Shown here piece by piece: positions 1-27,090 of a stretch of DNA of 64,000 bases. The stretch comes from Podarcis erhardii (taxonomy: Eukaryota): assembly GCA_964252035.1 (NCBI GenBank), contig OZ176203.1. The stretch is one strand, 5' to 3'. Made by a program: the position numbers and the translations under genes. Numbering within the stretch: position 1 is the stretch's first letter; each line of letters opens with the position of its first letter. The notes beneath the pieces were generated by a model that worked only from the letters and a program-made list of their open reading frames with translations, was not told the origin of the DNA and ran no database searches.

Positions 1-1099
1 ATGGCTTGAGGCATCCCTCATCTTGGCTTCCTCCTTCAGTTACAACAAGAACCCTCAGAGAGCTGCTACCTCATTTGAAAGAGGTAGCCAGTGGTCTTCT
101 AAAGTCAGCATCAAGTCTCAGGAACTAAAGCCCCCAACAGATGTGCATTACTGGTAATCTGTTTTGCTATAAATCAACAGAGCATTGGCCTGGGGAGGCA
201 TAAGATCCTCACATCAGAAAATTGTTGGGGAGCTATATTTCTAAGGGCATTAAAAAAAAAATTAACATTCTGACATGTGTAATGCAAGTCAGTGTGATGC
301 CCTTGCATGTAAACAGGTTTTTAATATGGAAAATACCAGTATAAACTGAAAATGCAGTCCTATCTAATATGTTTGAAAAAGATAAGAGAGCCCAGTATGT
401 ATTCTGTCTGTAACCTATAATTCCATCTATATAAAGTCATGTGTGGTCAGGTCTTTGATAACGAAGATGCACAGGCAAAAAATTATCCAGAAGCATCCTA
501 ACCATGTAGTTCCTTATTCTCTGTGCTTTTGAGGTTTTGCAACTCTCTATCACAATGCCCATTTCTTGTTAAGTAATATGTTTACTTACAGAAGAGGTTT
601 CACGAGACTGAAAAAACCTAGTCAAAGTGCTTGATGCTGTCTATAATAAAAGTTCAGCCTTGTCTCCATGTACACCAAAATAAGACTATAAGGTTCTGCT
701 GGTTCAGATTAATGGTCTATCTCATCTAGCATCCTGTTTTACAGTGGCAGCTTCAAGCATCTGGGAAGTCTACAAGCAAGCATGAAGGCAACAGCTACTC
801 CCTGTTGTTTGCCTCTTCCTTCAGTCATTAGTATTAACAACTGCATTACCTCTGAACAAAGAGCCTATATTTACAAGTCATGGTGAATAACCACTGATAG
901 ATCTATTATCCCACGAAACATCTAATGGCAGCAAATTCCTGAGGTTATTTATGCACTGTATGAATAAGCACTTTCTTTGGTCTGTCCTGATCTTACTGTG
1001 AAAAGCTGAGTTCTAGTACAATGTTCTAGTACTGAGTTCAGCAAAGAAGAATCTCTCTCTACCCCCTTTTTCCATACTATAAATCTCTATAAACCTCTG

Positions 1100-1817
1100 T
1101 CACGGGTGTAGGAAGGGGGGGGGGCGGTTCGCCCCAGGTGTCATCCCAGGGTGTGTGTGTGACAAAATCCCGGCTGGGCATGAGCTCTGAAATGTCAGGA
1201 CTTTGCAGATAATTTGTGACTCTTTGCAGAATTGACAGTACCCCAGCCTAAATATACGTATGACTTTTCCAGAGGGTTAATGATGGCTGAATCTTAAGCC
1301 ACTGTACATTGCATTTACCATCTCTGTGCAATGGAAGGGACATTGCTGGGCAGTAATAGTAATATCTGAAAGTACCTGCAATGAAATATAAAGAGTTTGT
1401 CTGCACCAACTAATTTTCATGCCCTTTGTATTTGCAGATACTTAAGTAGCTTGTCCCATTACCCACACACCTCATGATCCTTGATAGCTGGCACTTCTAC
1501 TTATAGTGTCTCAGCAGGAAAGTTAGTAACTCACCAGATACTAACTGCAGAAAGTTTGGTGCCTGGTTTCTCTTGCTTAAAAGGACAGAAATCTGTATTA
1601 TCCTTTAGCATGAGCCACCAAGAACATTGCAAAAGGTGGAGAAGAGCTTGTGTCGTGTAGTAATAAAGAGGGTGGGGTGCGACGATTGCACCCCTAACCT
1701 GGCGTGATTGCCACTGTGTCAGATCGCACCCCCCGGGCGTGATCACCCTGGGCGGATCACCCCGCCCCCGGGTGCACGGCACCACTCTGGGTGCCCCAAG
1801 CGGCTAGCTCCACCACT
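1100..1817. mobile_element. GC-rich hAT-like MITE split into 1100-1183 and 1677-1817 by an inserted ~0.5-kb duplicated segment
   Basis: Right end ctagctccaccactg (TIR-like), left end c.gggtgtaggaaggggg; TSD not clean. Confidence 0.45.
1184..1676 (+). repeat. Inverted duplicate, copy A (partner 16287-16787)
   Basis: Manual alignment to the reverse complement of 16287-16787: about 11 substitutions and one 8-bp indel. Confidence 0.93.
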
Positions 1818-2278
1818 GGTCACAGGCAGAGGCATACCTAGACTCCCTTGTGCCCTTCGCAAGGAGCCCCTTGCCCCATCCCTTGTATTCTTCTGCTGAG
1901 GTGCTCAGAAGAGTCTGCATGCCTTGCACAGCCACAAAGAGCAGTGGAGGAGCATTCGACCGAGTAAGCAGATGGGCTGAGGCCAACCTGAGTACGTCCC
2001 TGGTCACAGGGATGGATAATCTTTTTTCAGCCCAAGGGCCACCCCGTTTCATGGCCAATGTGCCAGCAACCACAGGCCAGTGATGGGAGAGTAAGAGGCA
2101 AAGGAGGGCATAGCAATGGATGCAATTCTTCCCTTTGTACAGTAGGCTACATTCCGGTCATAGAAAAATCAGAGGTCTCTACATCATTCAATCTGCCATC
2201 CACACAAGCAAGTGACGTTGTCACAGTTTAAAGACACATGTCAGCCAGGCAAAAACAGTCAAGTGCAGAGCCAAGTAA

Positions 2279-2634
2279 GGGACACGGGTCGTGCTGTGGG
2301 TTAAACCACAGAGCCTAGTACTTGCCGATCAGAATGTCGGCGGTTCGAATCCCCGTGATGGGGTGAGCTCCCATTGCTCGGTCCCTGCTCCTGCCAACCT
2401 AGCAGTTCGAAAGCACGTCAAAGTGCAAGTAGATAAATAGGTACCGCTGTGGTGGGAAGGTAAACGGCATTTCCGTGCGCTGCTCTGGTTCGCCAGAAGT
2501 GGCTTAGTCATGCTGGCCACATGACCCTGAAGCTGTACGCCAGCTCCCTCGGCTAATAAAGTGAGATGAGTGCCGCAACCCCAGAGTCAGGCACGACTGG
2601 ACCTAATGGTCAGGGGTCCTTTTACCTTTACTTT
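2279..2634 (+). mobile_element. Sauria SINE (tRNA-derived head, Bov-B-type tail)
   Basis: GGGAC..GGGT..GCTGTGG head, B-box GGTTCGAATCC, conserved body, (ACCTTT)-type tail; near-identical to 11 other copies in the window. Confidence 0.85.
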
Positions 2635-3788
2635 GCAGAGCCAAGTCAGTAAGAGACACTGTTTAGGGGTAGAGTACCAGGGACTAGTAAGTGAGATCTG
2701 GAGGGCAACATTTTGCTCCTGGGCCTGATGTTTCTAACCCTGGCACTAGTATGTCTCCTTTGCTGCCAATTTTCTCTGAACTAAAAAGCATTAGTGTTTG
2801 GTCTTTTATTGTTTTTAAAACCTAGAGCTGCTGATATGAGGTGGGAGCAGAGACTTCATAATGAGGAAATGGGGATATTTGACAATAGGGTGCCGCATCT
2901 GTAGTCAAATTGTACAATCTATCAGCTTTGAACTCTGTAACATCATTCTGCTGCATAAGTACTACTGTGCTAGAAGTTGATGGAGGGGGAAAGGAGTTAC
3001 TTCAGTCCTGTCTGGAGTTTTGAGACTATAATTCTTTCCAACAGACAGTGCAAAAGAGACTTTCCCATGATTAGCAGACTTCCCCATCATCCCTGGTCAC
3101 ATGGTATATGTATCAATGGTGGGGAGTCAAATGTTGAATGCACGTCAAAACTGAACATATCAGGGGAAAGGGTAAAACTGTATGGAAAAGCATTCAGATA
3201 TTTGGCATTTGACAGAATCCAGCTGCAAATAAATGTCATGGTACTGTGGATTACGTAACTTGAATTTAAAAGCAGCTTCCTCCATATATTTAACCAAATT
3301 TGCAATTGTCAGCATGTGTGATGCTCAGGCCTGGCTGAAGACATCTTGCAGCCTGGAATGAAAGTAATTTCAGGCACAGAAACTGAGTGGACTCACAATG
3401 GAACAACATCTTCTGCTGTACCTGAGGGTAGATTAGGAGTAGAGATGGATTTGGGGAGAGAACTGGTTCAGTCGCACTGGGTGCAGAGTCTCAGTGGCAC
3501 CACAGGGGGCTCTGCAACTATTATGTAGAATAGAAGGTGAGGGGCCGGGCGGGGGCACCAAATTTTGGTATTGCACAGGGCTAAAATTTGAGACCCCAAG
3601 TTACAACACTGTTGTTAGCAAGCTAGCTTCGGGGGCTGTTGCAGCCCCAACCTGAGGCAGCTGCCATATTGCTTAATGGCAGTGAACTTTGGAAACAAGT
3701 TTCTTAAGTGCAAACAAGAGCACCACAAATCACATAATCCATAAATGGAATCATGTTTAATGCATCACTGAAGTCACACAAAGTACTA

Positions 3789-4030
3789 CAGTGGTACCTC
3801 AGGTTAAGAACTTAATTCGTTCTGGAGGTCCGTTCTTAACCTGAAACTGTTCTTAACCTGTGGTGCCACTTTAGCTAATGGGGCCTCCCACTGCCGCCGC
3901 TCCACCATTGCACGATTTCTGTTCTCATCCTGAAGCAAAGTTCTTAACCCGAGGTACTATTTCTGGGTTAGTGGAGTCTGTAACCTGAAGCGTCTGTAAC
4001 CTCAAGCATTTGTAACCCGAGGTACCACTG
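3789..4030. mobile_element. Tc1/mariner-pogo type MITE, family A
   Basis: TIR CAGTGGTACCTC(A/G)GGTTA at both ends, TA duplication. Confidence 0.85.
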
Positions 4031-5659
4031 TATTTTGATCACATGCCTACATTAAAAAACAAACAAACACCTGAGCATTTCATTGCTTTTTGGAAAGACT
4101 ACACTATAAAATACTAAGCAGGTGACAGCTTATTAAAAATGGCACATCACACAGCATATTAATAGCTTGCCTCTTAACACCAGTTAACTGTCAGTAACTG
4201 AACAAATATGACTCAAACTTGATTACATTTACAACTCATGGACTGATTTGCATTAACTGGTGTGGAATTTACTTGTACAAAATCCCCCACACTAAAATCA
4301 AGAGATGCTTCAGGGAATTGACATACATAGATACCCCAGGTAATTTCCTATGGAATGACTGCTTTTGAGTTTAGGCTTGTATCATCCCATTCATTATGTA
4401 ACACAACTTCTTCTTTTTTAAGCTGGGGAGGTCCTGAAAACCCCACAAAACAGACGATACAGAATACAGCACCATGGCCCTTTCAAAACATTTTCCATTT
4501 TTTGTCACAGAAACCCACGAGATGCTTTAAGTTCTTTAGTCAGACCATGATATACAAAACCTATCTACACCACAAAACCTCACTTTTCACCAAAACCTGA
4601 TACTTGTTTCTAGGTAAACAAAACATTGGCTAAATGTCAAGTAGACGTCACAGTTCTTCCCTTTTTAGTGTGGCAGGTTCTGTTTTGAGTTGGCTTTCTT
4701 GTCTAGCTAATTAGATTTTATTTGTGGATGTGTGCCCTTGCTTGCCATAGGTGTCCTCTTACTGCTAAAGGAAGATCACACGCTCATTCCTATTTTATAT
4801 TTGAATGAGAACACGCCCCCGTGTATTTTGGGGGACTCAACATTTAGAAAATGGGGTGAGATTGTCCAGAGTTGTTGAGCAACAAAGAAACCGTTCACCG
4901 CCAGCTACTGCCTATCGCCTGCCTAAATGCCGCTGCAACACCCAATCAAAAAAAGGCCTTGCCGCAGTAAAAAAAATCCTCGTCTTATACCCGGAAAAGT
5001 ACGATACCTTGCTGCCATCATGATATGAAGTCTGGACCTTGGTTTCAAGAACCACTTGTGCTGAGATTATGATATCTGCAACAACGCTGAGCATCCACAC
5101 CACCAGAGCCCATCAGGCTAAAATATAAACGCCTTCATCTTACGGTAGATATCATATCTAGCAATTTTAACTTTCCCCTCTGCTTTTTGGAGTTTCTTTT
5201 GTGGGGGGGAACTGATGAAGTAAGGTTTGGTCTATGAAAGCCACGATCTGTCGGTTTCTTTTTAAAATGCCGTTAACACTCTGGGGGCGGGGGGGAACGA
5301 AGCATGAAAAACATGAGGTGAATAGATGCTGTCACTTCCCATACTGTTTTTTTTAGGTATACTTCAGCCATAGGGAGGGGAAATGCCATCGACTCCTTAA
5401 AAGGGTAGTCTGACCTAATCACTCGTAAGAACAACACGCAAAGGGGAAACAGTTGCATCTGAAATGTGTAGCAAGTGCAAGCACCACACAGAGGACTTAA
5501 CAGAGGACTTAACAAACTACTGATAAAGTGAGTAGAGGGAATACTATGTTCTGTTCTTTTCAAAACAAGGCATTTAAACTGCTGCTGTGGGAGTCAAATT
5601 TTCTGATGTGACTATGAAGCAGGCACTTCTTTAGAGCGGAGAGAGAAGCAATTTGTGGA

Positions 5660-6500
5660 GAATATTTATGATACAGCAATGTTCATAGAAGCATGCAGCA
5701 GGGCAAATTGGCAATTAAACTTAAGGGAATATGCAGGGATGGAGAAGCTCACCGGAAGAATAAGAAATCAAGAAGAGAGACTTTTTACAATGGAAGGGGG
5801 AAAATTTATTGATTATTTCAGGACATATTGTAAACAAATTTAAACATTAGTGGGATGGACATAAGCACGTGCAGTAAGAGATAACTAGGGGGGGATAAAG
5901 GAAAATTTATAAATATATTTGAATTGGATATGCAGCAACAAAAAGATATGAAAGTAATAACTGCAGAAGGGAGAGGAGGGAAGTTAAGTTAAGGGGAAGG
6001 TAAATTAGATTTATAAAGAGTTTGCTTTTCTGGCTAAAATGTTTCTGTAAGTTGAAAAATAAGAAGCATGTAGTAGGACTGTAGCTAACATCTGTTGCAG
6101 GAATACAAATAACTTTAATTTCAATTGCAACATTGCTAATGTTTCTAATTGAGGTGGGAGTTAGAACCAGAAATTAAGCCTTATATTAAAAGAGTACTGG
6201 GGGGGGGGACGGACTGGATCAGTACAAGTTACAGATAGGTAGCCGTGTTGGTCTGCCATAGTCAAAACAAAATAAAAAAATTCCTTCCAGTAGCACCTTA
6301 AAGACCAACTAAGTTAGTTCTTGGTATGAGCTTTCGTGTGTATCTGAAGAAGTGTGCATGCACACGAAAGCTCTTACCAAGAACTAACTTAGTTGGTCTT
6401 TAAGGTGCTACTGGAAGGATTTTTTTTATTTTGTTTTGGATCAGTACAAGTTTTTAAAGAATAAAGGATAGATAATTATAGGATATGAAGTAATATTAAG
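5660..6500 (+). mobile_element. Decayed L1-clade 3' end (ORF2 terminus and 3' UTR)
   Basis: EYAGMEKLTGRIRNQEERLF..GKFIDYF aligns with DYMQLAEMTGRIRDLGEEKM..EKFKKYL of the young L1; interrupted by the hairpin element at 6231. Confidence 0.65.
6231..6436. mobile_element. Penelope-like (PLE) terminal fragment with inverted repeat, 16-bp flanking duplication
   Basis: 78-bp inverted arms 6263-6340 / 6361-6438; flanking direct repeat TGGATCAGTACAAGTT (6215-6230, 6437-6452); ctgaagaagtg..cacgaaagct..gttggtctttaaggtgc is typical of reptile PLE termini. Confidence 0.7.
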
Positions 6501-6699
6501 CTGTTATTTACAAACTAGTTTAATCAATATCCATTTTTAAAGAATGTGATAATGACTTTACAGTTCCCTTTTAAAAATGAATCTTTTCTTTAAAACTTTT
6601 TATTTCTAGGATGCATTAAAATGTCTTCCCACTTGTTCTAAAGTAGTCCAGCCCTATGCATGTTTTACAATATCTGGTGCTTTTTAGTTTAGAAAAAAA

Positions 6700-7160
6700 G
6701 GCAATCAAGAGGGGACATACAGAGGTGTGAAAAATACCACACAGTGTGGAGAAAGTAGGCAGAGAGACTTTTTCCTCGTTCTCTTCTAATACTTGAACTC
6801 AGAGTCACCCAATGAAGCTGCAAATTTCAGGAGACACAAGAAGAAGTGTCTCAGCAAATGAGAAAACAGAATTTGCTGACATGTTGCGATGGGCGCCACA
6901 CAATGACTTTAGAAGGGGCTTAGACAAATTGGTGGAAGATAAGGCTAGCCTATTCATGATGTGGGGGTGCTATCTCACGTAATGGAAATGGTATACCTGG
7001 GGTATACCTGTAAATACCAGCTGCAGGTGAACATAAATGGAGAAAGTGCTGTTGGACTCGTGTCCTGCTTTTGGGCTTCCTATAAACATCTGCTTGGCCA
7101 CTATGAGAAAAGGATGCCAAACAAGATTGGCTTTGTTCTGATCACAGAGGGGTGTGCATG
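6700..7160 (+). mobile_element. Decayed CR1-clade LINE 3' end (similar remnants at ~680-1000, ~47355-47880 and ~43065-43255 on minus, ~8340-8420, ~33625-33690)
   Basis: Recalled squamate CR1 3' motifs (gagtcacccaatgaagctg, ttctatgattcta-type tail, tagaatcatagaa..gtagagttggaaggg). Confidence 0.5.
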
Positions 7161-7169
7161 GCACTGTGA

Positions 7170-7501
7170 TCTAAACCACTGAGCCTCTTGGGCTTGCCGA
7201 CCAGAAGGTTGGCGGTTCGAATCTGCACAACAGCGTGAGCTCCCACCATTGCTCTGTCCCAGCTTCGGCCAACCTAGTAGTTTGAAAGCATGCCAGCACG
7301 AGTAGATAAATAGCTGCGGCTGGGAAGGTAAACGGCGTTTCTGTGCGCTCTGGCACTCGTCATGGTGTCCCATTGCGCCAGAAGCGGTTTAGTCATGCTG
7401 GCTATGCGACCCTGGAAAGCTGTTTGTGGACAAACGCCAGCTCCCTCAGCCTGAAAAGCAAGATGAGCACCGCAACTCCATAGTCGCCTTTGACTGGACT
7501 T
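7170..7501 (+). mobile_element. Sauria SINE, 5'-truncated, divergent subfamily
   Basis: Same head/body with a distinct 3' half (ctggcactcgtcatggtgtcccattgcgcc..., tttgtggacaaacgcc). Confidence 0.75.
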
Positions 7502-7504
7502 AAT

Positions 7505-7974
7505 ATAATAATAATAATTTATTATTTATACCCTGCCCATTTGGCTGAGTTTCCCCAGCCACTCTGGGCGGCTCCAAATCAAGTGTTAAAAACAATACAG
7601 CATTAAATATTAAAAACTTCCCTAAACAAACAGGGCTGCCTTCAGATGTCTTTTAAAGAGAAGATAGCTGCTTATTTCCTTCACATCTAAAGGGAGGGTG
7701 TTCCAAGGGTGGGCACCACTACCAAGAAGGCCCTTTGCCTGGTTCCCTGTAACCTCACTTCTCACAATGAGGGAACTGCCAGAAGGCCCTTGGCACTGGA
7801 TCTCAATGCTGAACGATGGGGGTGGAGACGCTCCTTCAGGTATACAGGACCGAGCCCGTTTAGGACTTTAAAGGTCAGCACCAACACTTTGAATTGTGCT
7901 CGGAAACGTACTGGGAGCCAATGCAGATCTCTCAGGACTGGTGTTATGTGGTCCTGGCGGCCACTCCCAGTCTC
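7505..7974 (-). mobile_element. L2-clade LINE 3' fragment
   Basis: LHWLPVRFRAQFKVLVLTFKVLNGLGPVYLKERLHP; typical 3' UTR (ccgcccagagtggctggggaaac) and (AAT)n tail. Confidence 0.82.
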
Positions 7975-10900
7975 AGGCCTCTTAAGCTGTGGTGGTGAGT
8001 GCAGGCCCCGCCCCCTAGGCCCAATGGAGTTGGCTGGAGAGGGAGTGGTCTTCCTAGCACTCACAAGAGCAGCAACAGCAACTTAACCATCCAGAGGCCC
8101 TTTAACTTTTTTTTAGCTACCTGTTCTTACCCCCCCATTGATTAGATTTACTCCCAAAGAGGTATGCATAGGATTGTCCCCACAGGACCCAAACCTGTCC
8201 ACATTTATATGGACACTGTGTCCACTGGAGCTTACTTCCAAGTAAGCATTGGCAGGGGGCTTCAATCCTCGGATAACATCCAAGCTGCCTGCCCACTCAT
8301 GCAATGGAAGCTAGTGGAACAACAGGATCCCTGGTTTCTCTTAGAATCATAGAATTGTAGACCATGAAGGGACCTTGAGTGTCATCTAGTCCAACCCCCT
8401 GCAATGCAGGAATCTCAACACGTGGTTCCCCTGTGTGTCACCCAACCCTCTGGAGCAGATTTTTGGCACACACAGTGGGCTACAGGGGTAAGGGAAGGAA
8501 AGAGAAGCCCTGTTATGTGTGTGAACGCTCACACAACATTGGATCTCACTCCATACACAACATTGGATCTCACTCCAAGTGGTGTATGAATAGGCTTCAC
8601 AATGTTTTGTTGTTTATGTTAAATGAACAGTGACCTTGTAATATACTTTGGCTTTTTAAGTGGGGCAGAAACGTAATATTCACAATGCATTTTCTCATAT
8701 ATATTTTATCCCACAGTAAGTTTGATCCCCCCCTCAAAATAACAGTACACTCTTATATTTATATTCAAAACTCAGTTCCACTGTATTCAGTGGCACTCAT
8801 TAAGATAAATGTGCATACGATTGCAGCCTCCGACTTTTTATTTAAGAACAACTGCAAATCATACACTTTCAAAAAGTGTTGTCATTGCTTTCAGTGTGAT
8901 AATGATCATTGCACTTTATGTATATTTGACAGTTAAATATTATTTTAATGTACCAAATCTGACAAGTTGAGGGTTATGGTTGTGTATCTTTTAACCACTT
9001 CATTAGAGCGAAAGGTTCTATACATGCTGGTTTGTATCACTGCATAATGTATGTTTAATGCATTCAGCAACTCATTTTGACATCTCTAGGGTTCTCTGCC
9101 AATTCAAGACATTAATAGATATGACACTAAGAGTTTTTCACTTTTTACAGGCAATCACATTTCAAAACTTCACACAACTATATCTATATGCTATGTTCCC
9201 GTTAGATACTGGTCATCCTAATCTCACATTGGCAATAATTCAGTATCATTTTGTGTATGGACACCTGCATTTACTTCACTCATCCTCTCTTGATATTTTG
9301 ACGGGCTTTCTTCTTTATGAACTAGATAAATTTACAAAGCTGATTTTTTATCTATCGCAATTTTTCCCCGGACACAAAAATCTGGAAAAGGACATTTCAT
9401 TAATGTATTGAGTTTGAACAGAATATGGAACGGAACCGGTATACTTAAGCATAAAAACATACTAAAATGTTACAAAATCTTCTTTATTTTGCAGTTGTGA
9501 GGTCTGATTTGACATTGTGTGTATGCAACAACCCTTAAAGGAGGCTAGAATTGCACCAATCAGCCACAGAGTGAGAAGAGGGATGGAGGGGGACTTTTCA
9601 CAGTTTAGTCAAGCGCATACTTAACTTTGTCCTGTTCAAATAACCCAGCCTATTTGTGGAGTTCTCACTGTCCAATACATCTTCCATACACAACTATAAC
9701 CATGCAGAAATTATTGAAATGGAGGAGCATTTCAGCCCACCAATTCCCACAGCCCATCAAAACAGATAATGAGGATTCCAGCTTCCCTTAAAGAGCTGTG
9801 CAAATGCTTTGCTGGCTGTGAGATAGGGGCATTACATCTATAGCTCCTATTTCATGCATTTCTGTCTAGGGATACAAATACAGATGCTAGCTTCTCAGCA
9901 CGTAAAGCCCCTGGTTAGTTCAGGGCACTGCTATATAAGCACAACAAATTCAAAAACACTTGAAGCAAACTGCTGTTAACATTGCAACTACTGGAAACCC
10001 CAAAATTAGGAATCACATATAAATAATATTGTGAAATACACAGAAATTGGGAGGAGCAGTTCTATCTATTCATGTCTTCTATTAAAAACTCCCTTGCACT
10101 TGAAACAAAAAATCATTAGGAGTTGTGCCAGCAAAGTCTCTTCCTTCCTCTTTTCTGCATCTGTTGTCTCCACCCCGCCCTCCTAAGCTAGGTTAGTTTT
10201 TGTACTTGCACAAAACGTAATTCTCAATAAACACACTATGGACTGAGCTCTAAGTTGTTGTTGCTGCAGCAGATATACTACAAATCAAAGAATATACCCT
10301 CATCATCCAAGACAGCTAGTGAGGTGCAGAAATAATGTTACTACAAACTGAACTAATATCCTGTTTTTATTAACTGTGCCACAAGACAGCTTTGTAAGAC
10401 AGTCGTGAAGCAATCTGTGTGGCTGAGGGTTGCTAACTATACAACACACTAGACTGAGCAGAGTGAAACTCCATGTAAGTTTGGGAGCTGAAAGCCACAC
10501 AACCACTTCTGCTGCCGCAACCAACCATTGTAAGCTTTCTAACCACTGTGGAGTGTAGATGAATGAACCTAGACTTCATTTCTTCCCCCCCTCATACAAC
10601 CATAGCCATGCAGGATGGAAAAATTGTTGGACTAGTGAAAAGGTTTATGAAGTAGTATGTACGTGCAAAGTTTTATTTGGTAAATAAGGAGTTACTGTGC
10701 TGAAAGTAAGAGGTGGGTTTGTGCACCGGGTCGGGGGGAGGGTTCTTAATGGGCGTGCAATCCTAAAATAATATCACAAACTTATTTCCCCCTTCGACAC
10801 ACCATGAAACAAAGGGTGTGCATGTGTGTGAAGAAGTGAGTCTGAGCATGTTGGAGGTGTTTGGGGAGAGGATACAACCTCTTTAAACAATGCAAAGGCT

Positions 10901-11763
10901 CAATTCACATGAAAGAAGTTCACACACAAAATATTGTACTTGTTTTTGGAAAAGTAAATCTTCAGGACCTACTTCTAAAATGCTAGAGAGCTGCAGTCAA
11001 AGCTCTGACTGTTTTTGTTTTTTAAAAATAAATAAATGAATAAATATATTATTGGCTGCTTCCCTGGCCTTTGAGCTCCCACCTCTGTTTGCTTACCACT
11101 TTCCCTTTAACAGCACACAATTGCTTCCGTTCTTAAGACTGACGTGAGGATTACAGACAGAAGTTAGTCAGGTAGTTACCAGAGAGAGCAGGCCACTGGG
11201 ACAGGTGGGCTTTGGAATTTCCATTCCCAGGGAGACTGCATGGGCAATATTTCACAGGGTGAAAAAAAATAGCCACATCAGAAGATTTGACAGTGTATTT
11301 TGCATCATTGCAAGGATTTAGTATTTCTGACCTGGTCTGCCAACGATCCTTTCAGACAGAAAGTTTGTTCTGTCATACTGTTCCAAGTCTAGTGTCATGG
11401 TGTCAGTTTCAGAAAGCAGGTTTCTCCTTTTATTAATACTGCCAGTGAGCAGTTAGGTTAATCCCGAAGAAACCAGAGGCATGGCTTTTGGCCCTTCCTT
11501 TCAAGTTATTAAGTTGCTTTATCTCATTTCAAACTTCTGATCTTCTATAGACTGCTGTTTTGAAATCCAAACTTAAAGAGTTGGAATTATATTTTTTAAA
11601 AGAAGAAGAAATAATTTAACTACTAATTTAATTACTTGGTTTTACACAAGGCTAACCTATTGACCACTTGCAATGAAAAATATGATTGCCTACATTAAAC
11701 ACAACGCACACCCCTGCCCCTTCTGTTTTTCTAGGTCTCCTAAGCTTCCTGGATATATCAGCT

Positions 11764-12846
11764 ATGGCAACAGCCTGGGCCACCGCTGCCTCAACAGCCC
11801 ATCAGACTAATAATTCAACTTGTGACCTATATGAGCACAGCGATACGGCACATATCCTGTTGCCCATGTTCTACAGTGTTATTTTCTTAATCGGAATGCT
11901 TGGAAACGCACTTGCTTTGGCTGTAATCGTTAAGAACAGAAAGAAGATGAATTCTACTACTATTTACTCAACGAATCTTGTTGTATCAGACATTCTTTTC
12001 ACTACGGCGTTGCCTGGAAGAATAGCATACTATGCACTGGGCTTTCACTGGCCACTTGGAGAAGCACTCTGCAGACTCTCAGCACTTGTCTTTTACATCA
12101 ACATTTATGCCGCTGTGAACTTCATGACATGCCTGAGCATTGACAGGTTTGTCGCCGTGGTTCATCCTTTACGCACAAAGATCAGAAGAGTTAAATGTGC
12201 CACGTACATCTGTTGCTTTGTGTGGTTTCTTGTACTTGCCCAAACCATTCCATTGCTTTTACAACAAATGTCATACGAGGAAGGAGAAAGAATAACATGC
12301 ATGGAATACCCAAACTTTGAACGAATTGCAAATCTCCCTTGGATACTTCTTGGAGCCTGCCTTCTGGGATACGCATTCCCCCTTGGGATTATATTAGTCT
12401 GTTACTCTAAAATTAGTTGCAAACTCTGCCATATTGCAAGAGAAAATCCACTAGCTGAAAAGTCCGGAACCAACAAGAAGGCTTTTAATACAATTATTTT
12501 TATCATCGTTGTCTTTGTCATCTGTCTTACTCCGTATCATGTTGCCATTATTGTATACATGATTAAGAAGATTGTGCTTAAAGATATCATTCCATGCAGC
12601 AGTCGGCAAATCTTCCAAAAGACCCTCCATTACACTGTTTTCCTGATGAATTTAAACTGCTGCTTGGATCCTTTTATCTATTTCTTTGCATGTAGAGGAT
12701 ACAAAAGAACAATCATGAAAATATTGAGACGTCAAGGAAGCATATCACTATCGAGCGCTGTCAAAACAGCTCCTGAGGAAAGCTCTCGTGATATAGGAGA
12801 CACACAGCTGTCTCCCCTTTCAACATCTCTAAATGGAAAAAGGTGA
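11764..12846 (+). CDS. GPR183: G protein-coupled receptor 183 (EBI2, oxysterol receptor), single coding exon, 360 aa
   Basis: Seven-TM class A GPCR: NNSTCDLY, GN..AL in TM1, LPGRIAYY, SIDRFVAVVHP, CMEYPNFE, TPYHVAII, LNCCLDPFIYFFACRGYKR, closely matching human EBI2. The ORF-track start at 11686 (TTG) lies upstream of a polypyrimidine/AG acceptor (ttctgtttttctAG, 11721-11734), so the first ATG of the exon (gctATGg, 11764, strong Kozak) is used. Confidence 0.96.
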   Translation: MATAWATAASTAHQTNNSTCDLYEHSDTAHILLPMFYSVIFLIGMLGNALALAVIVKNRKKMNSTTIYSTNLVVSDILFTTALPGRIAYYALGFHWPLGEALCRLSALVFYINIYAAVNFMTCLSIDRFVAVVHPLRTKIRRVKCATYICCFVWFLVLAQTIPLLLQQMSYEEGERITCMEYPNFERIANLPWILLGACLLGYAFPLGIILVCYSKISCKLCHIARENPLAEKSGTNKKAFNTIIFIIVVFVICLTPYHVAIIVYMIKKIVLKDIIPCSSRQIFQKTLHYTVFLMNLNCCLDPFIYFFACRGYKRTIMKILRRQGSISLSSAVKTAPEESSRDIGDTQLSPLSTSLNGKR

Positions 12847-13878
12847 ACACAAATTAACATTTGAAACGTGCTTCCAGAGTTTCTATTTCAGAAAACATTG
12901 GTAACAGTAAAAACCACGAACTATTTCTTTTTATAAAGGAGCTAATATTTTTATTCTTCCAGGAGTGGCGTGGATTGGAGTGGTGATGTAGCACATGTAG
13001 CCACAAGAAAGAGAAAAACTGGCATTGTATTTGCTTTTAAAATTTGTTTTCATGTCTTTGTTTGTCCATGTTGCTTTATCATGGGGTGCAGTTATGTATA
13101 TTTCTATTTCTGAATCTCAGGAGCCCAGGCAGGAGAGTGATTTAGGTCTTAGACAGAGAAGCAAGCTAAAATTAAACTGAATGTTTAACTCCAGTTCATT
13201 CACCCTTAACACCTATGACTGGTACAAGGGATATACCTGGAAGGAAGCATGTAATCATCTTTGCTTTTTCATAGGTAATGAACTACTATATAAAATCATT
13301 GTTTATATATAAAAGCCTCCTGTCACAAGAAGGGGGTGATTTGCCTAATCTACCAGTGTGACTTTCCAATCTACCATGTGGCTCACACAATACATCTCCA
13401 AGAATATGCAGTATACTGGCAAACTGTAGAATATGAAGCTACCACAGCTGGGCAGATGGTAAGCAACCAAGATAGGGAGGAGGTCAGAAGCAGGGTGCGG
13501 CTAAGAATGGCACTTCTTTCGGTAGGAAGCCAGTCACTGATTTAAGCAAAAAAACACCCAGTCTCTTAGCTTCTAAAAAACAAAGAAGAAAATAGCACGT
13601 TGTACAAGAGGAAGGAGGGAGGGGTTGCTATCCACCATCAGCAACATCTGCATCCTAAAAACCCTTTGTTGCCATTCTTCTGGTTTACTTTTCATACTGT
13701 TTTGTTTTCCATTAGTGAGTTCTTTTGCATCCTGATCCTGGGACTTTTTGTTTGTGTTCTTGTACCTACGTGCTTTCCTTTCTCAGAATCAGGGGGTCGT
13801 TGGATCACGTTGGGCTTGTTTTTTTAAATCCCAAGCATACATATAGGCAGCTGTGTTCTGGCAGAAACCAATAACCTC

Positions 13879-14137
13879 GCTCGGTCCCTGCTCCTGCCAA
13901 CCTAGCAGTTCGAAAGCACGTCAAAGTGCAAGTAGATAAATAGGTACTGCTCCGGCGGGAAGGTAAACGGCGTTTCCATGCGCGGCTCTGGTTCACCAGA
14001 AGCGGCTTAGTCATGCTGGCCACATGACCCGGAAGCTGTACGCCGGCTCCCTCGGCCAATAAAGCGAGATGAGCGCCACAACCCCAGAGTCGGTCACGAC
14101 TGGACCTAATGGTCAGGGGTCCCTTACCTTTACCTTT
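13879..14137 (+). mobile_element. Sauria SINE, 5'-truncated
   Basis: Starts mid-element (gctcggtccctgctcc), ends in ccttacctttaccttt. Confidence 0.85.
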
Positions 14138-15339
14138 AATAACCTTGCTTGGATTAAGGGTGAACTATGATAAATTAGTAAGCATGCAAGGGAAGTCATT
14201 CATGGAATAAGAGACTGAAGAATGGGTAGATATGTACAAAAACATATATTTTATAAATTCAGCTAAAAAAACTCTCCAGTAGGAAAAGTAAAGCAGCAGA
14301 ACACTAGCTTAAAAACTGGCTATTATGAAAGATGTGTCTATAAAATTAGAGATATTGTGGTAAAGGGCAGTACCCAGTTTTATAAGGCAATAACTCTCCC
14401 AAGTATGAAACCCAGAAGCAGGAACAGTGATTGGAACTTGAGGTCTGGATGGCACAAGCTACCTGTAGTATTTTTAGAGACATATCAAGTGAAAATTAGG
14501 TGGTATGTTTCATTGTGGGAGTTCTGATACCTCCTGATGTTATAAATAGTTGTGGACTGGTACCTAAAAGCAGTTGCTCTGTAGTAAAACAAGCAGTGAA
14601 CACGTGGCGCATGACAGCTGCCCGTGGAGGTGCGGAACCGTGGCAGAGCTCAAGCTACCAAAAGAACAGGAGTTAACACCACTACCAGTTCTTATGCAAT
14701 GTCCTTCCTTCCATTTAAGGATCAATAGATTTTAAAACATCAGAAATGAGTTAGGAACATTCCCATGTGAGCCTGGTACTAGGTAGCATTGAGTGACAGA
14801 TGAAAAACAGCCTGATTTTTAGACTTTTAAGGGTCATTTTTTTTCCTTCTAAAAATCACGTGTTTGACATGTTAATTGGTTTGAAACTCATGGCAATCAG
14901 CAACTTCGTTATTTGTCTGAAGAAGAAATGTAACACAATATCTATTCTTTAGGAACATATACAAATATAGTCAAAGCAAATTAAAACCATCTACTTGCAA
15001 TTTCCAACCTATGTTCATTTCACTTATTTATATTCCTGCTATTTTCCTGGACGCTTTTTTTTAGTCTAAGAGCAAGAAAAGCTGGGTCTACAAAAAGGTA
15101 CCAATGCCACATATGCCTATTATAAATATTGTTGTAATATCAAACTTGAAGTCAAGCCGAAAAAACTAAGAGTTTTGCACGATCAAGGCTTAAAGAACTG
15201 GCTCATATTAACTCAACACCCTTTAATGTAAAGCTAGTGAGGAATGGTTCCCTAAAGCACTGTTCCTCACGGTGGGCTGAGATGGAGCAGTTAGCCTGGA
15301 GCCACTTTCAGGTGGGCCTCCTTGCAGCTGCCTGCCCAG

Positions 15340-15508
15340 CAATGGCGTAGCGTGGGGGGTGCAGGGGGGGCCGGCCGCACCGGGCGCAACATCTGGGGGT
15401 TAGGGTTAGGGGGTGCAAATCCACGGGTTAGGGGGCACAAATCCACGGGTTAGGGGACGCAAATGACTTGCCTTGCCCCGGGTGCTGACAACCCACGCTA
15501 CGCCACTG
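15340..15508. mobile_element. hAT-type MITE containing TTAGGG repeats
   Basis: TIR CA(A/G)TGGCGTAGCGTGGG; perfect 8-bp TSD CTGCCCAG (15332-15339, 15509-15516). Confidence 0.82.
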
Positions 15509-16012
15509 CTGCCCAGGACCTTCTCGCTTGCCTGTCTAACCCACTAGCCATACCATAGCCTTTTGGTTGGACCAATTCCTTGCATGCTGAACAAAGGTGG
15601 TCACGAGATGGAGAAACTGGGGGAAGAAGGAGGTGGGAAATAACGTCTTCCGTCAATGCCAGAAGTTTCGCCACCACGAACCCAATACAAAATGTATTAA
15701 ACCAGGGATGGCCCTTGCGATGCTGTTAGACTGCAACTCCCATCATCCCTGACCATCTTTCCATGCTTGCTGGGGATTAAGAGAGTTAGAGTCTAACAGC
15801 ATCTGGTGGGCCACTGGTGCCCCATCTGTACATTAAACAATACATAGTAGTCAACCTAAAAAACTTGTACACACATACACACACATGCACACAGAGCAGA
15901 GAGTATATAATATTCCAAAAAAAACCCAAAAAACCAAACCTGGATGATAACACAGTTCTATTACTTTTGTATTACTGTTGATGGTGAGACAGTGTCTTGA
16001 CTGAAGCCATTA

Positions 16013-16254
16013 CAGTGGTACCTCAGGTTACATATGCTTCAGGTTACATACGCTTCAGGTTACAGACTTCGCTAACCGAGAAATAGTACCTCGGGTTAAG
16101 AACTTTGCTTCAGGATGAGAACAGAAATTGTGCTCCGGTGGCACGGCGGCAGCAGGAGGCCCCATTAGCTAAAGTGGTGCTTCAGGTTAAGAACAGTTTC
16201 AGGTTAAGAACGGCCCTCCGGAACGAATTAAGTACTTAACCCGAGGTACCACTG
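16013..16254. mobile_element. MITE family A (reverse orientation)
   Basis: Same TIRs and internal TTCTTAACCTGAA subrepeats. Confidence 0.85.
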
Positions 16255-16286
16255 CACTGAGTTGAGATTTGGACCATCAATTGTAT

Positions 16287-16787
16287 CCCACCCTCTTTAC
16301 TACTACATGACACAAGCTCTTCTCCACCTTTTGCAATGTTCTTGGTGGCTCATGCTAAAGGATAATACAGAATTCTGTCCTTTTAAGCAAGAGAAACCAG
16401 GCACCAAACTTTCTGCAGTTAGTATCTGGTGAGTTACTAACTTTCCTGCTGAGACACTATAAGTAGAAGTGCCAGCTATCAAGGATCATGAGATGTCTGG
16501 ATAATGGGACAAGCTACTTAAGCATCTGCAAATACAAAGGGCATGAAAATTAGTTGGTGCAGACAAACTCTTTATATTTCATTGCAGGTACTTTCAGATA
16601 TTACTATTACTGCCCAGCAATGTCCCTTCCATTGCACAGAGATGGTAAATGCAATGTACAGTGGCTTAAGATTCAGCCATCAGCCTGTCATTAACCCTCT
16701 GGAAAAGACATACGTATATTTAGGCTGGGGTACTGTCAATGCCGCAAAGAGTCACAAGTTATCTGCAAAGTCCTGACATTTCAGAGC
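16287..16787 (-). repeat. Inverted duplicate, copy B (partner 1184-1676)
   Basis: Reverse complement aligns to 1184-1676 at about 97.5%; not inside any recognised repeat. Confidence 0.93.
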
Positions 16788-17670
16788 AGTATCTCATGAT
16801 CTCCCATTGCGGCTTCATCCTTGGCAATGAAGAGGAAGGAAGTCTGGTGACTTAAGTCTGGCCAAAGGTACTCTTCCCTTTATAAATGTGGCCTCACAAG
16901 GCAAAGAGATATTGACAGTATTTTCAAATGTGATTATTGAGCAAAATGCTGCAGACAAGCTGGTAATTAGTAATGGTAATTATCAGTGTTGTCACTAGTT
17001 AATCCTTTGAATTGTAGAAAAATTCATGTATGGAATCTGAATATACTTGGCTATGACGAAGAAGGTAGTACCCAGACCTAGGGCTAACACACTCACTGAA
17101 ATCAATGGAGGTTAGTTATGACTGACTAAAATCCAATTGATTTCATTGGGTGTACCTAAATCTGGACCCAACTCTTTGTCTTTAGGTGCTGCAGATATCT
17201 TCTTAGAAGAGGGATCTTCCCTTCACTTTTATACAGGAGGGAATGCCTGTTCTAAGTGTGCCCTTGCCGCATGCACGTATAAAAATAAAGCATTTTTTTT
17301 TTAAAAAAATCTGCCATCTAGTTGAAAATGTCATAGCCCTAGTAATTACTGGTATGTTATCCCCTGAATCAAGTTCTCTCATACAGGAGATGAGAAACCA
17401 GCACAGGAACACCATCTCTCCCGCTTCTCTTCTAAAAAAAACTATGGTTCTCATATCTTCCATGACCAGACATGATATCAGTGTCAGCAGCAAAAGAGCC
17501 AATTGTGCTACTGTTGGTCCCTGACACTGACAATGGCAGAGATAGTGGCAGAATTCCATACAGGCCCCTTGTACTGCATCCTACAGGTCTTTTCAGTCTT
17601 TTTTTGAGCTCTAAATTACAATGTGTAAACACGTATTAGTTCTAGCTTTAGCTGTGTTATACATAACACA

Positions 17671-18031
17671 GGGACGCGGGTGGCGCTGTGGGTAAAACCT
17701 CAGCGCCTAGGACTTGCCGATCGCATGGTCAGCGGTTCGAATCCCCGCAGCGGGGTGAGCTCCCGCCGTTCGGTCCCAGCTCCTGCCCACCTAGCAGTTC
17801 GAAAGCACCCTTAAGTGCAAGTAGATAAATAGGTACCGCTTTATAGCGGGAAGGTAAACGGCATTCCGTGTGCTGCTCTGGTGCCGGTTCACCAGAGCAG
17901 CTTTGTCACGCTGGTCACGTGACCCGGAAGTGTCTGCGGACAGCGCTGGCTCCCAGCCTCTAGAGTGAGATGAGCGCACAACCCTAGAGTCTGTCAAGAC
18001 TGGCCCGTACGGGCAGGGGTACCTTTACCTT
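17671..18031 (+). mobile_element. Sauria SINE, full length, distinct subfamily
   Basis: Full head and (ACCTTT) tail; TSD TACATAACAC at 17660-17669 and 18032-18041; diagnostic variants (gtaaaacctcagcg, gtgtctgcggacagcg). Confidence 0.88.
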
Positions 18032-19811
18032 TACATAACACTACATTTGGGATTTATAAAAGTGAGTAGGCAGAACTCACACATTGTGAAATACGATTTC
18101 ACAATATTTGTACAACTAGGTCTGTGACCTCAATGGAACCTATAGTTTAGTTTGACTTTTTTCTAAGTATCTAAAACATTTTGAGACATGGAATCGTGTT
18201 TAGGAAGAAAGAAAGAAAGAAATGCAAGTCCTCACTCTTTGGAGTCAACCTATTATCTTGAAATACGTTTAAGAATCACCTGCAGTACAAACTCCAACCC
18301 AAACAGCACACTTTTGGAAAAGTTATTTGTATATATATTTCCCACTCAATTTCACTCAATTTCACTTCCACTCGGATAAAAACAAACCAATGTTTCAGTC
18401 GCAAAGCTGATGAAATTTCTATACCTTCCTCTAACCAAACTTTTGTAGAAAACTAATAGATTAAGGTCAACGCACATCTGTATGCGCTTATACAAGTTAC
18501 CAAGGCAAAGACACAACATGTGGTTTATGTTTTGAAATGCTTTCTCAGAATAGCCCGAAAACTTCCTCCCAAGAATCTTTCACAACATGATATCCATCAG
18601 TATAAACAAGAAAAGGAAGTGAAGGTACTGCTGGCAAGACACCTTCCTCATTTGATTTGCCACCTCATTATACCTTGCCGCTTCTAACCGCATTAAGCAC
18701 TTTTTGTGTGGTGACAATATTGACTGGAAGTGAAATTGAGGTTTTTCAAGGTGCTGAACCAATCCTGCCATGCAGCTACTTGCTGCAATTGCCAAATTTT
18801 GTGCACACTTTTTCATTTTGAAAAGCATTTCTCCCAAGACAATGGCAAGAAAACACATCACCAAGTATGAAATGAAATTTAAAAAAAAGAAAATGAAGTC
18901 AAAGCTTTTCTAAGACAAAAAACCTCCCTTATTTCCGTGAGCAGCTGTCATGGTTTTACGTCTACAATGAATTCAAGAAAGCCATTCTCTGCACAAAGAA
19001 AAGGGGAAATAATCATAGTTTTACTGCAAAAAATAGGCAGGACTCACACAAGTGCCTTTCAAAAGAGCCGTGCAGTTAAGAGGAAGTTTGCCCTTATCTT
19101 CCTTGATGTTGCTGCTTGGAGTGGAAAAACAAACAAACGTAAGTGGGCTTGCTCAGAAGCTGGGGTTCTGGCAATTGCCCTAGGATACAAGGTCATCTTA
19201 TTGGTTTTACTCATTTATTTAATAAAATGTATACACTGCTTGATTGTAAAAACAACAACAACACACCACAAAGCAGTTTACAAAAGGATAAAACAAATCA
19301 ATAAAAAAATACAACAATAGTTTAAAACATGCAAAAAGTTGAAATACTAATGATGCACACATGCCCTCTTCAAATCTGCTCACTGGAACGGGGCCTGTAT
19401 CAATGCTATGTTGGATGGCACTAGCAAAAGTGTTTTACTCATTATGGCAAAGAGAAGACTAGACACTGTGAAGCAGCCTTGGGAGATAATAAACTGTCAC
19501 ATACTGGTCTGTTTCTCTCCAAACAAACCACAAACGGAAGCCAAGGTCCGTTCCAGTATGCTGCTCATTCACTGTAAGTCATAAACCATAAGCTGCCGTA
19601 ACATGTGAACCAGTCCACAAAATCCAGGGTTCAAATGGTATTTGAACCTGGGTTCCCATGTCTAAGCTCCAAGTTTTGTCTAGCTGATGAAATATCACTT
19701 TCTTGAAGCCCTACCATATCAGAGTAGAGCATCAAGGTACTTTTGCAAGATATTGCATCATCCATGTAGACATTTGTGAGGGTGGTGGAAAGAAAAGAAC
19801 TTGTGATTTTA

Positions 19812-21434
19812 TATCAAGATGAATGTATTGCCAAAAATGTTGTTTTTGTTTCAAACATTACAGATTGTGGACAAAACGGAGTGCTTCCGGAAGTGGCAGA
19901 AAGATATATCCAGATTTGTCTGGCAGGGCAAAAAGCCCAGAATTAAGTTTAAGATATTAACAGATGCGAAAGAAAGAGGGGGCTTTGCCCTGCCAGACTT
20001 AAAGTTGTACTATGAAGCCGCAGCTTTTTGCTGGCTAAAAGACTGGCTACTTCTCGAAGACACTGACGTGTTGGACTTGGAAGGTTTTAACAATGCTTTT
20101 GGTTGGCATGCATACTTATGGTATGATAAAGTTAAGATCAATAAGGCCTTTAAGAACCATATTGTCAGGAAAGCAGTGTTTAATGTCTGGACAAAATACA
20201 AAGACTTACTGGAAAATAAAACTCCAAGGTGGCTCTCACCTCTGGAGGCTAAGGCCCTAAAAAGACCCAATATGGAGGCCAAATGGCCAAAATATTGGGA
20301 AATATTAGAAAAAGATGGAGACAATTGGAAATTGCAGAGTTTAGAGAAAATGAAGGATAAGGTGCGAGACTGGTTACATTATGCTCAGATTAAAGAAGTT
20401 TTTAAAAATGATAAAAAGTTAGGGTTCCAGGTGGAGAAATCGAAGTTAGAAACTGAATTGTTAGAACCAAAGACTAAGGTATTATCTAGAATGTATAACT
20501 TGCTGTTAAAATGGAATACACAAGACGAAATGGTTAAATCGGCTATGATAAAATGGGCACAGGACATTGGGCATAACATCATGTTTGAGGACTGGGAAAG
20601 GTTGTGGACCACTGGGCTGAACTTCACCGCATGTAATGCTCTGAAGGAAAATGTAATGAAAATGATATATAGATGGTACATGACCCCAGTTAAACTTGCC
20701 AAAATATACCATTCGTCTGATAATAAATGTTGGAAATGTAAAGAAAACGAAGGAACATTCTTTCACCTCTGGTGGACATGCCCTAAGGTGAAGGTCTTCT
20801 GGGAAATGATATATAATGAGCTGAAAAAGGTATTTAAGTATACCTTCACTAAGAAACCAGAGGCCTTCCTTCTGGGTATTGTCGGCCAGAAGGTGTTAAA
20901 GAAGGACCGAACATTCTTTATGTATGCAACAACGGCAGCAAGGATACTCATCGCAAAAAAATGGAAAACTCAAGATCTACCCACACTGGAAGAGTGGCAG
21001 ATGCAACTGATGGACTATATGCAACTGGCCGAGATGACTGGCAGAATCCGTGACCTGGGAGAAGAGAAGATGGAGGAAGACTGGGAGAAATTCAAGAAGT
21101 ATCTACAAAAACATTGTAATTTGGTTGAATGTTAAGAAGGATGCTAGATTATAAAAAATTGGCCACCACTAAATTAGATTTGAAATTTGATGATAAGTGA
21201 GATTAAAGAAAATATAAAATTTATTGGAAGAAGTGCTAGATTATATTTGAATGTGTGGACATGAGATTGTAAACAAGTTGATAATTTGTTTGGAAAAAAC
21301 TTTTAACGATGTAAATGGGAGCGGGAGACACGAGGGAGTCCAAAGAAGTCATGAAATTATGTCTGTGATAGAAGTAAGATTGTTTATTATTTGTGCATTT
21401 ATATTTTAAAACTTTAATAAATATTTATAAAAAT
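19812..21434 (+). mobile_element. Young 5'-truncated L1-clade LINE: C-terminal ORF2 (uninterrupted 438-aa frame 19819-21135) plus 3' UTR
   Basis: Post-RT region GGFALPDL and Cys-rich zinc-binding motif KCWKCKENEGTFFHLWWTCPKV; AATAAA and A-rich end; perfect 22-bp TSD AAGAAAAGAACTTGTGATTTTA at 19790-19811 and 21435-21456. Confidence 0.9.
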
Positions 21435-26864: not shown

Positions 26865-27090
26865 CAGTGGTACCTCGGGTTACATACGCTTCAGGTTACA
26901 GACTCCGCTAACTGAGAAATAGTACCTTGGGTTAAGAACTTTGCTTCAGGATGAGAACAGAAATCGTGCTCCGGTGGCGTGGCGGCAGCAGGAAGCCCCA
27001 TTAGCTAAAGTGGTGCTTCAGGTTAAGAACAGTTTCAGGTTAAGAACGGACCTCGGGAACAAATTAAGTATTTAACCCGAGGTACCACTG
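26865..27090. mobile_element. MITE family A (reverse orientation)
   Basis: TIR CAGTGGTACCTCGGGTTA, TA TSD. Confidence 0.85.

What the first reader, a model, noticed from the sequence alone, without database searches (positions are those of the whole stretch)
1184..16787. GPR183 is bracketed by a ~0.5-kb, ~97.5%-identical inverted duplication of unique-looking DNA, one copy inside a hAT-like MITE
Seen: 1184-1676 is the reverse complement of 16287-16787 (about 11 substitutions plus one 8-bp indel). The segment is AT-rich, has no TIRs, tail or ORF, and has no third copy in the window. Copy A is flanked on both sides by halves of a GC-rich hAT-like MITE, while copy B is in plain intron. Inference: copy B is the donor and copy A a recent templated insertion copied from 15 kb away in inverted orientation (gap repair at a transposon break, or Pack-type capture). 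Possible consequences: a substrate for homology-driven inversion of the 14.6-kb block carrying GPR183, a ~500-bp dsRNA in UBAC2 pre-mRNA, and duplication of any regulatory sites. The donor has splice-like signals (tttatatttcattgcAG, gGTGAGT). The locus currently keeps the human orientation, so no net inversion is evident.
Basis: partly seen in the sequence, partly recalled or inferred. Interest (0 to 1): 0.7.

Follow-up and report, generated by a model that had tools for sequence, protein, structure and literature searches.

The report
Inverted 0.5-kb copy inside palindromic MITE
A 0.5-kb piece of ordinary non-coding DNA downstream of the lizard GPR183 gene has a young, flipped second copy 15 kb away, lodged at the centre of a small hairpin-shaped transposon relic; it looks like a known kind of DNA-repair scar with no evident function.

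Summary
Window 1184-1676 (493 bp) is the reverse complement of 16287-16787 (501 bp), with 11 substitutions and one 8-bp indel. There is no third copy in the 64 kb, and homology stops sharply at both ends. The pair brackets an intact GPR183 coding exon (11764-12846, +).

Copy A lies at the apex of an imperfect GC-rich palindrome (arms about 1101-1177 and 1698-1818). The palindrome has CAG-type termini and an 8-bp target-duplication-like octamer, so "MITE" is reasonable. "hAT-like" is only plausible, because this element has no second copy in the window.

The 0.5-kb unit has no terminal inverted repeats, no target-site duplication, no poly(A), no RNA-family match and no coding signal.

Best reading (about 55%): a few million years ago a break or an aborted gap repair at the palindrome centre was patched by copying about 0.5 kb from 15 kb away, in inverted orientation.

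I could not run the decisive tests: genome-wide copy number, read support and the orthologous empty site. A multi-copy cargo-bearing MITE or a low-copy repeat therefore remains a live rival.

The proposed consequences (inversion, dsRNA, regulation) are untested. This is a new member of a known kind, of modest interest.

The parts
1184..1676 (+). Copy A: the derived (inserted) copy of the 0.5-kb unit, 493 bp
   Evidence: reverse complement of 16287-16787, with 11 substitutions and an 8-bp gap. It is flanked on both sides by the arms of one palindromic element.
16287..16787 (-). Copy B: the presumed donor, 501 bp, in sequence unique within the window
   Evidence: Its flanks 16788-17669 and 15300-16010 have no other copy in the window.
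1101..1183 (+). Left part of the GC-rich palindromic MITE-like element (element 1). The arm reaches about 1177; 1178-1183 is unpaired centre.
   Evidence: core 1114-1164 vs 1717-1769, z about 5.4; arms 1086-1177 / 1698-1842 with gaps; terminus matches the reverse complement of the right terminus at 10/15.
1677..1818 (+). Right part of element 1: 1677-1697 is unpaired centre with a small 7-bp-stem hairpin, 1698-1818 is the right arm, ending in ...CCACCACTG
   Evidence: No other copy in the window.
1099..1106 (.). Octamer GTCACGGG: a possible left target-site duplication of element 1. It overlaps the terminus defined by TIR similarity.
   Evidence: 7/8 match to 1819-1826. About 0.6 such matches are expected by chance in the space searched.
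1819..1826 (.). Octamer GTCACAGG, shared between element 1 (right) and element 2 (left)
   Evidence: (D5).
1827..2002 (+). Element 2: a 176-bp MITE with CAG... termini (10/15) and a perfect 8-bp duplication GTCACAGG (1819-1826 / 2003-2010), sitting in the same target octamer as element 1
   Evidence: (11-nt direct repeat 1816-1826 / 2000-2010).
11764..12846 (+). GPR183 coding exon (360 aa), lying between the two copies
   Evidence: ORF; E = 2.9e-158 to human GPR183, PDB 7tuz; 7tm_1, 2.8e-57.
16011..16254 (.). Copy of a common 244-bp palindromic MITE family, 32 bp beyond the end of copy B
   Evidence: 8 copies in the window at 87-95% identity. The 3789-4032 partner reported is therefore a coincidence of a common repeat, not part of the duplication.

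Best explanation
Copy A is a locally templated insertion, that is, a DNA patch or 'filler'. An old GC-rich palindromic MITE-like element upstream of GPR183 suffered a break, or an interrupted gap repair, at its centre. The free end copied about 0.5 kb from a non-coding stretch 14.6 kb away on the same chromosome, using the opposite strand, and was then rejoined to the other half of the element. The donor (copy B) stayed intact. About 2.2% divergence has built up since. At squamate neutral rates of roughly 1-2e-9 per site per year this is about 5-11 million years, if no gene conversion occurred (inference). Shown here: the duplication, its sharp limits, its position at the palindrome apex, and the absence of transposition hallmarks. 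Inferred: the polarity (B to A), the break, and copying from DNA rather than RNA. No function is indicated; the pair is most likely a neutral scar.
For: - Identity and limits: one 493/501-bp inverted match, with no similarity beyond either border.
- Position: the flanks of A form one imperfect palindrome (z about 5.4). The minimum-energy fold of the joined flanks pairs left with right through 64 pairs that enclose the junction. Only 7 nt (left) and 21 nt (right) of unpaired centre border the insert.
- No transposition signature for the unit: no TSD at either copy, no TIR, no poly(A) tract (sequences). No Rfam or tRNA match. Open frames are no longer than in 45% of window tiles.
- No third copy in 64 kb, while true interspersed families show 8-11 copies each in the same window at 78-95% identity.
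- The substitutions are spread as expected for later random decay (clustering p about 0.1).
- The feature set matches published class 2 templated sequence insertions: no TSD, no poly(A), donor intact (PMC5110952).
- Unchecked notes of this scan report other local, partly inverted templated patches in the same genome (s1-220639, s1-237527).
Against: - Genome-wide copy number is unknown. Two copies in one window do not prove two copies in the genome.
- The empty (pre-insertion) form of the palindromic element was not seen, in the window or elsewhere, so polarity and junction microhomology are inferred.
- 0.5 kb is long for polymerase-theta-type templated insertions, which are usually tens of bases (my knowledge).
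- The fold energy of the joined flanks is no better than that of shuffles (z = -0.27). The palindrome therefore rests on the alignment test, not on energy.
- No read evidence that copy A is really assembled correctly.
Confidence: 0.55

Rival explanations
1. The 0.5 kb is cargo of a mobile, cargo-bearing MITE family (Pack-type transduplication), or is itself a low- to mid-copy interspersed repeat. On this reading copy A arrived by transposition of the composite element, perhaps by local hopping from near the donor, and the genome holds further copies.
For: - The unit lies exactly between the two terminal parts of a TIR-bearing element, with an 8-bp TSD-like octamer outside.
- An unchecked note of this scan reports a hAT MITE in this genome that carries a GNAL fragment in hundreds to thousands of copies (s1-259082). 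Capture followed by amplification therefore has a precedent here.
- Lizard genomes hold many young DNA-transposon families (my knowledge).
Against: - There is no other copy of the unit or of the carrier element in 64 kb, although common families show 8-11 copies there.
- The donor-like naked copy lies only 15 kb away, which in-situ formation predicts but genome-wide transposition does not.
- The carrier's arms are old and degenerate (about 74% in the core), while the cargo is 97.7% like its donor.
Confidence: 0.25
2. The break was the same, but the patch was reverse-transcribed from an RNA fragment (intronic or antisense transcript of the locus), as proposed for human class 2 templated sequence insertions.
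For: - Class 2 insertions lack TSD and poly(A), and experiments trace them to RNA (PMC5110952).
- The donor is probably within a transcribed intron (synteny, not tested).
- In the orientation of copy A the unit ends 6 nt after an AATAAA (AGTAAA in B).
Against: - No poly(A) tract and no TSD, so this is not a LINE-mediated class 1 event.
- An RNA origin gives no reason for the donor to be only 15 kb away in cis, whereas replication- or repair-based template switching does.
- Transcription of the donor was not tested.
Confidence: 0.1
3. Assembly artefact: copy A was placed at 1184-1676 by a chimeric read or a mis-join and does not exist there.
For: It could not be excluded, because no reads could be laid.
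Against: - There are no gaps in the window.
- The copies differ by 11 substitutions and an 8-bp indel, which is far above polishing error.
- The orientation is inverted and the copy is embedded between the two matching arms of one palindrome. A random mis-join would not place it there.
Confidence: 0.05
4. Reverse polarity: copy A, inside the MITE, is the older copy, and copy B was templated from it into a break in the intron.
For: Sequence identity alone is symmetric. Copy A keeps one CpG (1654-1655) that is CpA in B, and AATAAA where B has AGTAAA. This is weak.
Against: Copying would have had to start and stop exactly at the borders between MITE and non-MITE sequence. That only makes sense if the unit had already been inserted there from a third place.
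Confidence: 0.05

Closest known systems
Class 2 templated sequence insertions / DSB 'patch' insertions (Onozawa and Aplan, PMC5110952)
   Same: A copy of a sequence from elsewhere is inserted while the donor stays intact. There is no target-site duplication, no poly(A) tract and no LINE-type insertion-site features.
   Different: The human cases are described as coming from distant regions, often other chromosomes, and as RNA-derived. Here the donor is 14.6 kb away in cis and inverted, and the recipient is the centre of a palindromic transposon relic. Junction microhomology could not be scored without the empty site.
Filler DNA / abortive gap repair inside DNA transposons (Ac/Ds, P elements; plant 'gap patching') - from my knowledge; the original papers were not found in the library (one search lists only citing papers)
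   Same: Foreign, nearby-templated DNA sits between the two terminal parts of a TIR element. Interrupted synthesis-dependent repair with template switching predicts exactly this.
   Different: These cases are documented mainly in plants and Drosophila, whereas this is a lizard. No evidence was obtainable that the carrier was excising at the time.
Pack-MULE / Pack-TIR transduplication
   Same: A host-derived fragment lies between transposon termini.
   Different: No evidence of mobilisation of the composite element. The cargo is non-coding DNA with no gene fragment. The carrier is old and degenerate.
Replication-based template switching (FoSTeS / MMBIR) producing local inverted duplications - my knowledge
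   Same: A short-range (tens of kb) inverted copy with sharp junctions, at a hairpin-forming sequence that could stall a fork.
   Different: MMBIR events are usually recognised as complex rearrangements with several switches. Here there is a single insertion and no loss detectable from the window alone.
Inverted segmental duplications as NAHR substrates for inversions
   Same: Two inverted, highly similar copies bracket a 14.6-kb block that holds a gene.
   Different: The copies are only 0.5 kb, below the usual 1-kb definition. The longest uninterrupted identity is 159 bp. No inversion is evident.

Membership tests
Templated insertion / DSB patch (class 2 TSI type) | The inserted segment is a copy of a sequence present elsewhere, and the donor is intact | tested here: met
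   both copies are present and B is continuous with unique flanks.
Templated insertion / DSB patch (class 2 TSI type) | No target-site duplication of 5 bp or more at the insert junctions, and no poly(A) tract | tested here: met
   the flanks of A are ...GGGCATGA and GTGCGACG..., with no shared repeat. No A-run is present at either end.
Templated insertion / DSB patch (class 2 TSI type) | End-joining signatures (microhomology, microdeletion, untemplated bases) relative to the empty site | not testable with these tools
   No uninterrupted copy of the carrier element is available. The only hint is that CATGA recurs 6 nt outside the donor border; chance is about 2% by my estimate.
hAT-superfamily MITE (carrier element 1) | Terminal inverted repeats | tested here: met
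   Termini match at 10/15 (single-comparison p about 8e-4). Long subterminal inverted similarity (z about 5.4).
hAT-superfamily MITE (carrier element 1) | 8-bp target-site duplication | tested here: inconclusive
   GTCACGGG / GTCACAGG match at 7/8 but overlap the TIR-defined left terminus. About 0.6 such matches are expected by chance. The neighbouring element 2 has a perfect 8-bp duplication.
hAT-superfamily MITE (carrier element 1) | Multiple dispersed copies of the family | tested here: not met
   No other copy in the 64-kb window, even at E = 10 with word size 7. The genome-wide count is not testable.
Pack-type transduplicating element | Host-derived fragment between the element's termini | tested here: met
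Pack-type transduplicating element | The composite element has transposed (further copies with their own TSDs) | not testable with these tools
   No genome search was available. There are none in the window.
Interspersed repeat / transposable element (the 0.5-kb unit itself) | Structural hallmarks (TIR, LTR, poly(A) or SINE tail, TSD, Helitron ends) or coding capacity | tested here: not met
Interspersed repeat / transposable element (the 0.5-kb unit itself) | More than two copies in the genome | not testable with these tools
   Only two in the window.

The most novel reading that the evidence does not exclude
This may be a DNA-transposon relic caught at the first step of cargo capture in a vertebrate. 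The palindromic MITE would have just acquired 0.5 kb of host DNA from 15 kb away. The same event would have created an inverted-repeat pair that can flip the GPR183 block within its host intron (a polymorphic inversion) and form a ~490-bp intramolecular RNA duplex in the host pre-mRNA.
Probability: 0.12. Interest if true: 0.55.

Novelty: new member of a known kind. Interest (0 to 1): 0.3.

Why it matters
If confirmed as a two-copy, in-situ event, this is a clean natural example of a long (0.5 kb), cis, inverted templated patch at the centre of a hairpin-forming transposon, in a reptile germline. Such cases show how DNA-transposon relics acquire foreign inner sequence and how small inverted repeats arise around genes. 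The practical consequences for GPR183 (inversion, double-stranded RNA, duplicated regulatory sites) are only possibilities. Nothing found here suggests selection or function.

Tried and rejected
**Steps that could not be run or found nothing**
There is therefore no depth, junction-spanning or inversion test.
- Rfam (E up to 1) and ARAGORN on 1-20000 found nothing inside either copy or the carrier element.
- UBAC2 exons were not searched for, because no reference protein was obtainable without typing one. The nesting of GPR183 in UBAC2 is taken from human knowledge (searches give only loose support).

**Ideas tested and rejected**
- A larger ancient inverted duplication that includes 3789-4032 / 16011-16254: that pair belongs to a common MITE family with 8 window copies.
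- Mutation clustering as a sign of error-prone synthesis: not significant (p about 0.1).
- A hidden exon or ORF in copy B: the 84-codon open stretch is ordinary.
- Hairpin energy of the joined flanks as evidence for the palindrome: no better than shuffles for this G+C-rich sequence.
Full report
**Observation**

The inverted duplication exists as described. The repeat finder gives two abutting inverted arm pairs: 1281-1676/16287-16682 (396 nt, 98%) and 1184-1283/16688-16787 (100 nt, 96%). blastn joins them into one alignment of 493 against 501 bases, with 11 mismatches and one gap. The alignment and the difference list show 7 transitions, 4 transversions and one 8-bp indel (present in B, absent in A), next to a partial direct repeat.

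Similarity stops within a base or two at both borders. About 1 kb of flank on either side of each copy finds nothing near the other copy. No third copy exists in the window, and the window has no N. The unit is 41% G+C against 43% for the window, so it is not really AT-rich.

**What lies between and around the copies**

- The ORF at 11764-12846 (+) is GPR183: E = 2.9e-158 to human GPR183 (PDB 7tuz), with a 7tm_1 domain.
- A second class-A receptor ORF lies at 34018-35010 on the same strand. By position it is probably GPR18, but that was not confirmed.
- This layout fits the human gene order as I recall it, so no net inversion is visible.
- I did not identify UBAC2 exons. The statement that both copies lie in one UBAC2 intron rests on human synteny (my knowledge, loosely supported).

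**The carrier of copy A**

The 83 bases left of A and the 142 bases right of it are G+C-rich and inverted-similar to each other.
- The core 1114-1164 aligns with the reverse complement of 1717-1769 at score 30, against 17.6 +/- 2.3 for shuffles.
- With gentler gap costs the arms extend to about 1101-1177 and 1698-1818. The left arm lacks roughly 45 bases that the right arm has.
- The minimum-energy fold of the joined flanks is one long hairpin whose 64 left-right pairs enclose the junction. Its energy is no better than that of shuffles of this G-rich and C-rich sequence, so I rely on the alignment test and not on energy.

Copy A thus sits at the apex of the palindrome, with 7 unpaired bases on its left and 21 on its right.

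The termini (CACGGGTGTAGGAAG, and the reverse complement CAGTGGTGGAGCTAG) match at 10 of 15 positions. An octamer, GTCACGGG / GTCACAGG, flanks the element, but it overlaps the left terminus and is not significant by itself. Directly to the right lies a second element of 176 bp (1827-2002). It has similar CAG termini (10/15) and a perfect 8-bp duplication of the same octamer.

So "MITE" is well founded. "hAT-like" is plausible from the CAG termini and the 8-bp duplications, but it is unproven, because element 1 has no other copy in the window.

**The unit itself**

- Neither copy has a target-site duplication, terminal inverted repeats or an A-tail.
- No Rfam family or tRNA matches.
- The longest open frame (84 codons in B) is exceeded in 45% of 501-bp window tiles.
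- True interspersed families in the same window have 8 copies (the 244-bp MITE next to B) and 11 copies (a 355-bp repeat at 2278-2634), at 78-95% identity. The unit has two copies at 97.7%.

**Mechanism**

The simplest account is a locally templated patch. A break or an interrupted gap repair at the centre of the palindromic element was filled by copying 0.5 kb from 14.6 kb away on the opposite strand, and the donor was left intact.

This feature set matches published class 2 templated sequence insertions: no TSD, no poly(A), donor intact (PMC5110952). From my own knowledge it also matches filler DNA from abortive gap repair in Ac/Ds-type elements and short-range replication template switching. 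The centre of a palindrome is where nascent strands primed from both ends must meet, and where hairpins stall or break. This fits the insert's position, but that link is inference.

Two smaller details bear on the copying:
- Copy B ends 32 bp short of another hairpin-forming MITE (16011-16254). This could be where copying stopped; that is speculation.
- At the left junction, CATGA recurs 6 nt outside the donor border. This may be residual homology or chance (about 2% by my estimate).

The 11 substitutions are not clustered (p about 0.1), as expected for later neutral decay. 2.2% divergence suggests roughly 5-11 million years at 1-2e-9 per site per year (inference from general squamate rates, not measured here).

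**Rivals**

- Cargo-bearing mobile MITE, or a low-copy repeat, with more copies elsewhere in the genome. This is the main rival. An unchecked note of this scan describes such an amplified cargo-bearing hAT MITE in this genome (s1-259082). Against it stand the degenerate carrier, the absence of other copies in 64 kb and the closeness of the donor.
- An RNA-derived patch. This is possible but does not explain the proximity in cis.
- An assembly artefact. This is unlikely given the 2% divergence, the indel, the gap-free context and the placement between matching arms, but it was not tested with reads.
- Reverse polarity. This would need an unlikely coincidence of borders.

**Consequences**

- The two copies could pair as RNA over 484 positions if they are co-transcribed.
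- They could in principle mediate inversion of 1677-16286. However, the longest perfect tracts are 159 and 120 bp, which is short for efficient homologous exchange (my knowledge).
- Nothing here indicates that either happens.

**Limits**

- Copy number in the genome, read support, inversion polymorphism and the orthologous empty site therefore remain untested.
I disclose this, and I sent no such letters to search tools afterwards.

**Verdict**

This is a new member of a known kind (a templated insertion into a transposon relic), of modest interest.

Noticed in passing
window 1819-2010: A 176-bp MITE (1827-2002) with CAG termini and a perfect 8-bp duplication GTCACAGG sits in the same octamer that ends the neighbouring palindromic element. 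Two related elements apparently used one target site.
   Followed up: partly
window 6263-6438: A near-perfect hairpin (81-nt arms, 96% complementary, 14-nt loop) gives sub-threshold matches to several miRNA families on both strands (mir-559, 60 bits against a gathering score of 95). It is most likely a palindromic MITE, not a miRNA gene.
   Followed up: no
window 34018-35010 (+): A second intact class-A GPCR ORF (330 aa, 7tm_1 2.5e-39; the best solved relatives are LPAR6 and CysLT2 at about 1e-34) lies downstream of GPR183 on the same strand. By position it is probably GPR18; not confirmed.
   Followed up: partly
window 19819-21135 (+): A 438-aa ORF without a Pfam hit. Its C-terminal Cys/His-rich motif suggests the tail of a LINE ORF2.
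   Followed up: no
window 2278-2634 and 10 other places: A ~355-bp repeat family has 11 copies in the window at 78-92% identity. One copy lies 600 bp right of copy A and another (17670-18034) lies 880 bp beyond copy B.
   Followed up: no
window 16011-16254, 3789-4032, 23650-23865, 26875-27090, 36342-37158, 38120-38335, 47528-47755: A common 244-bp palindromic MITE family (termini CAGTGGTACC...). The copy at 36342-37158 appears split by an insertion, consistent with the scan's other note on this window.
   Followed up: no
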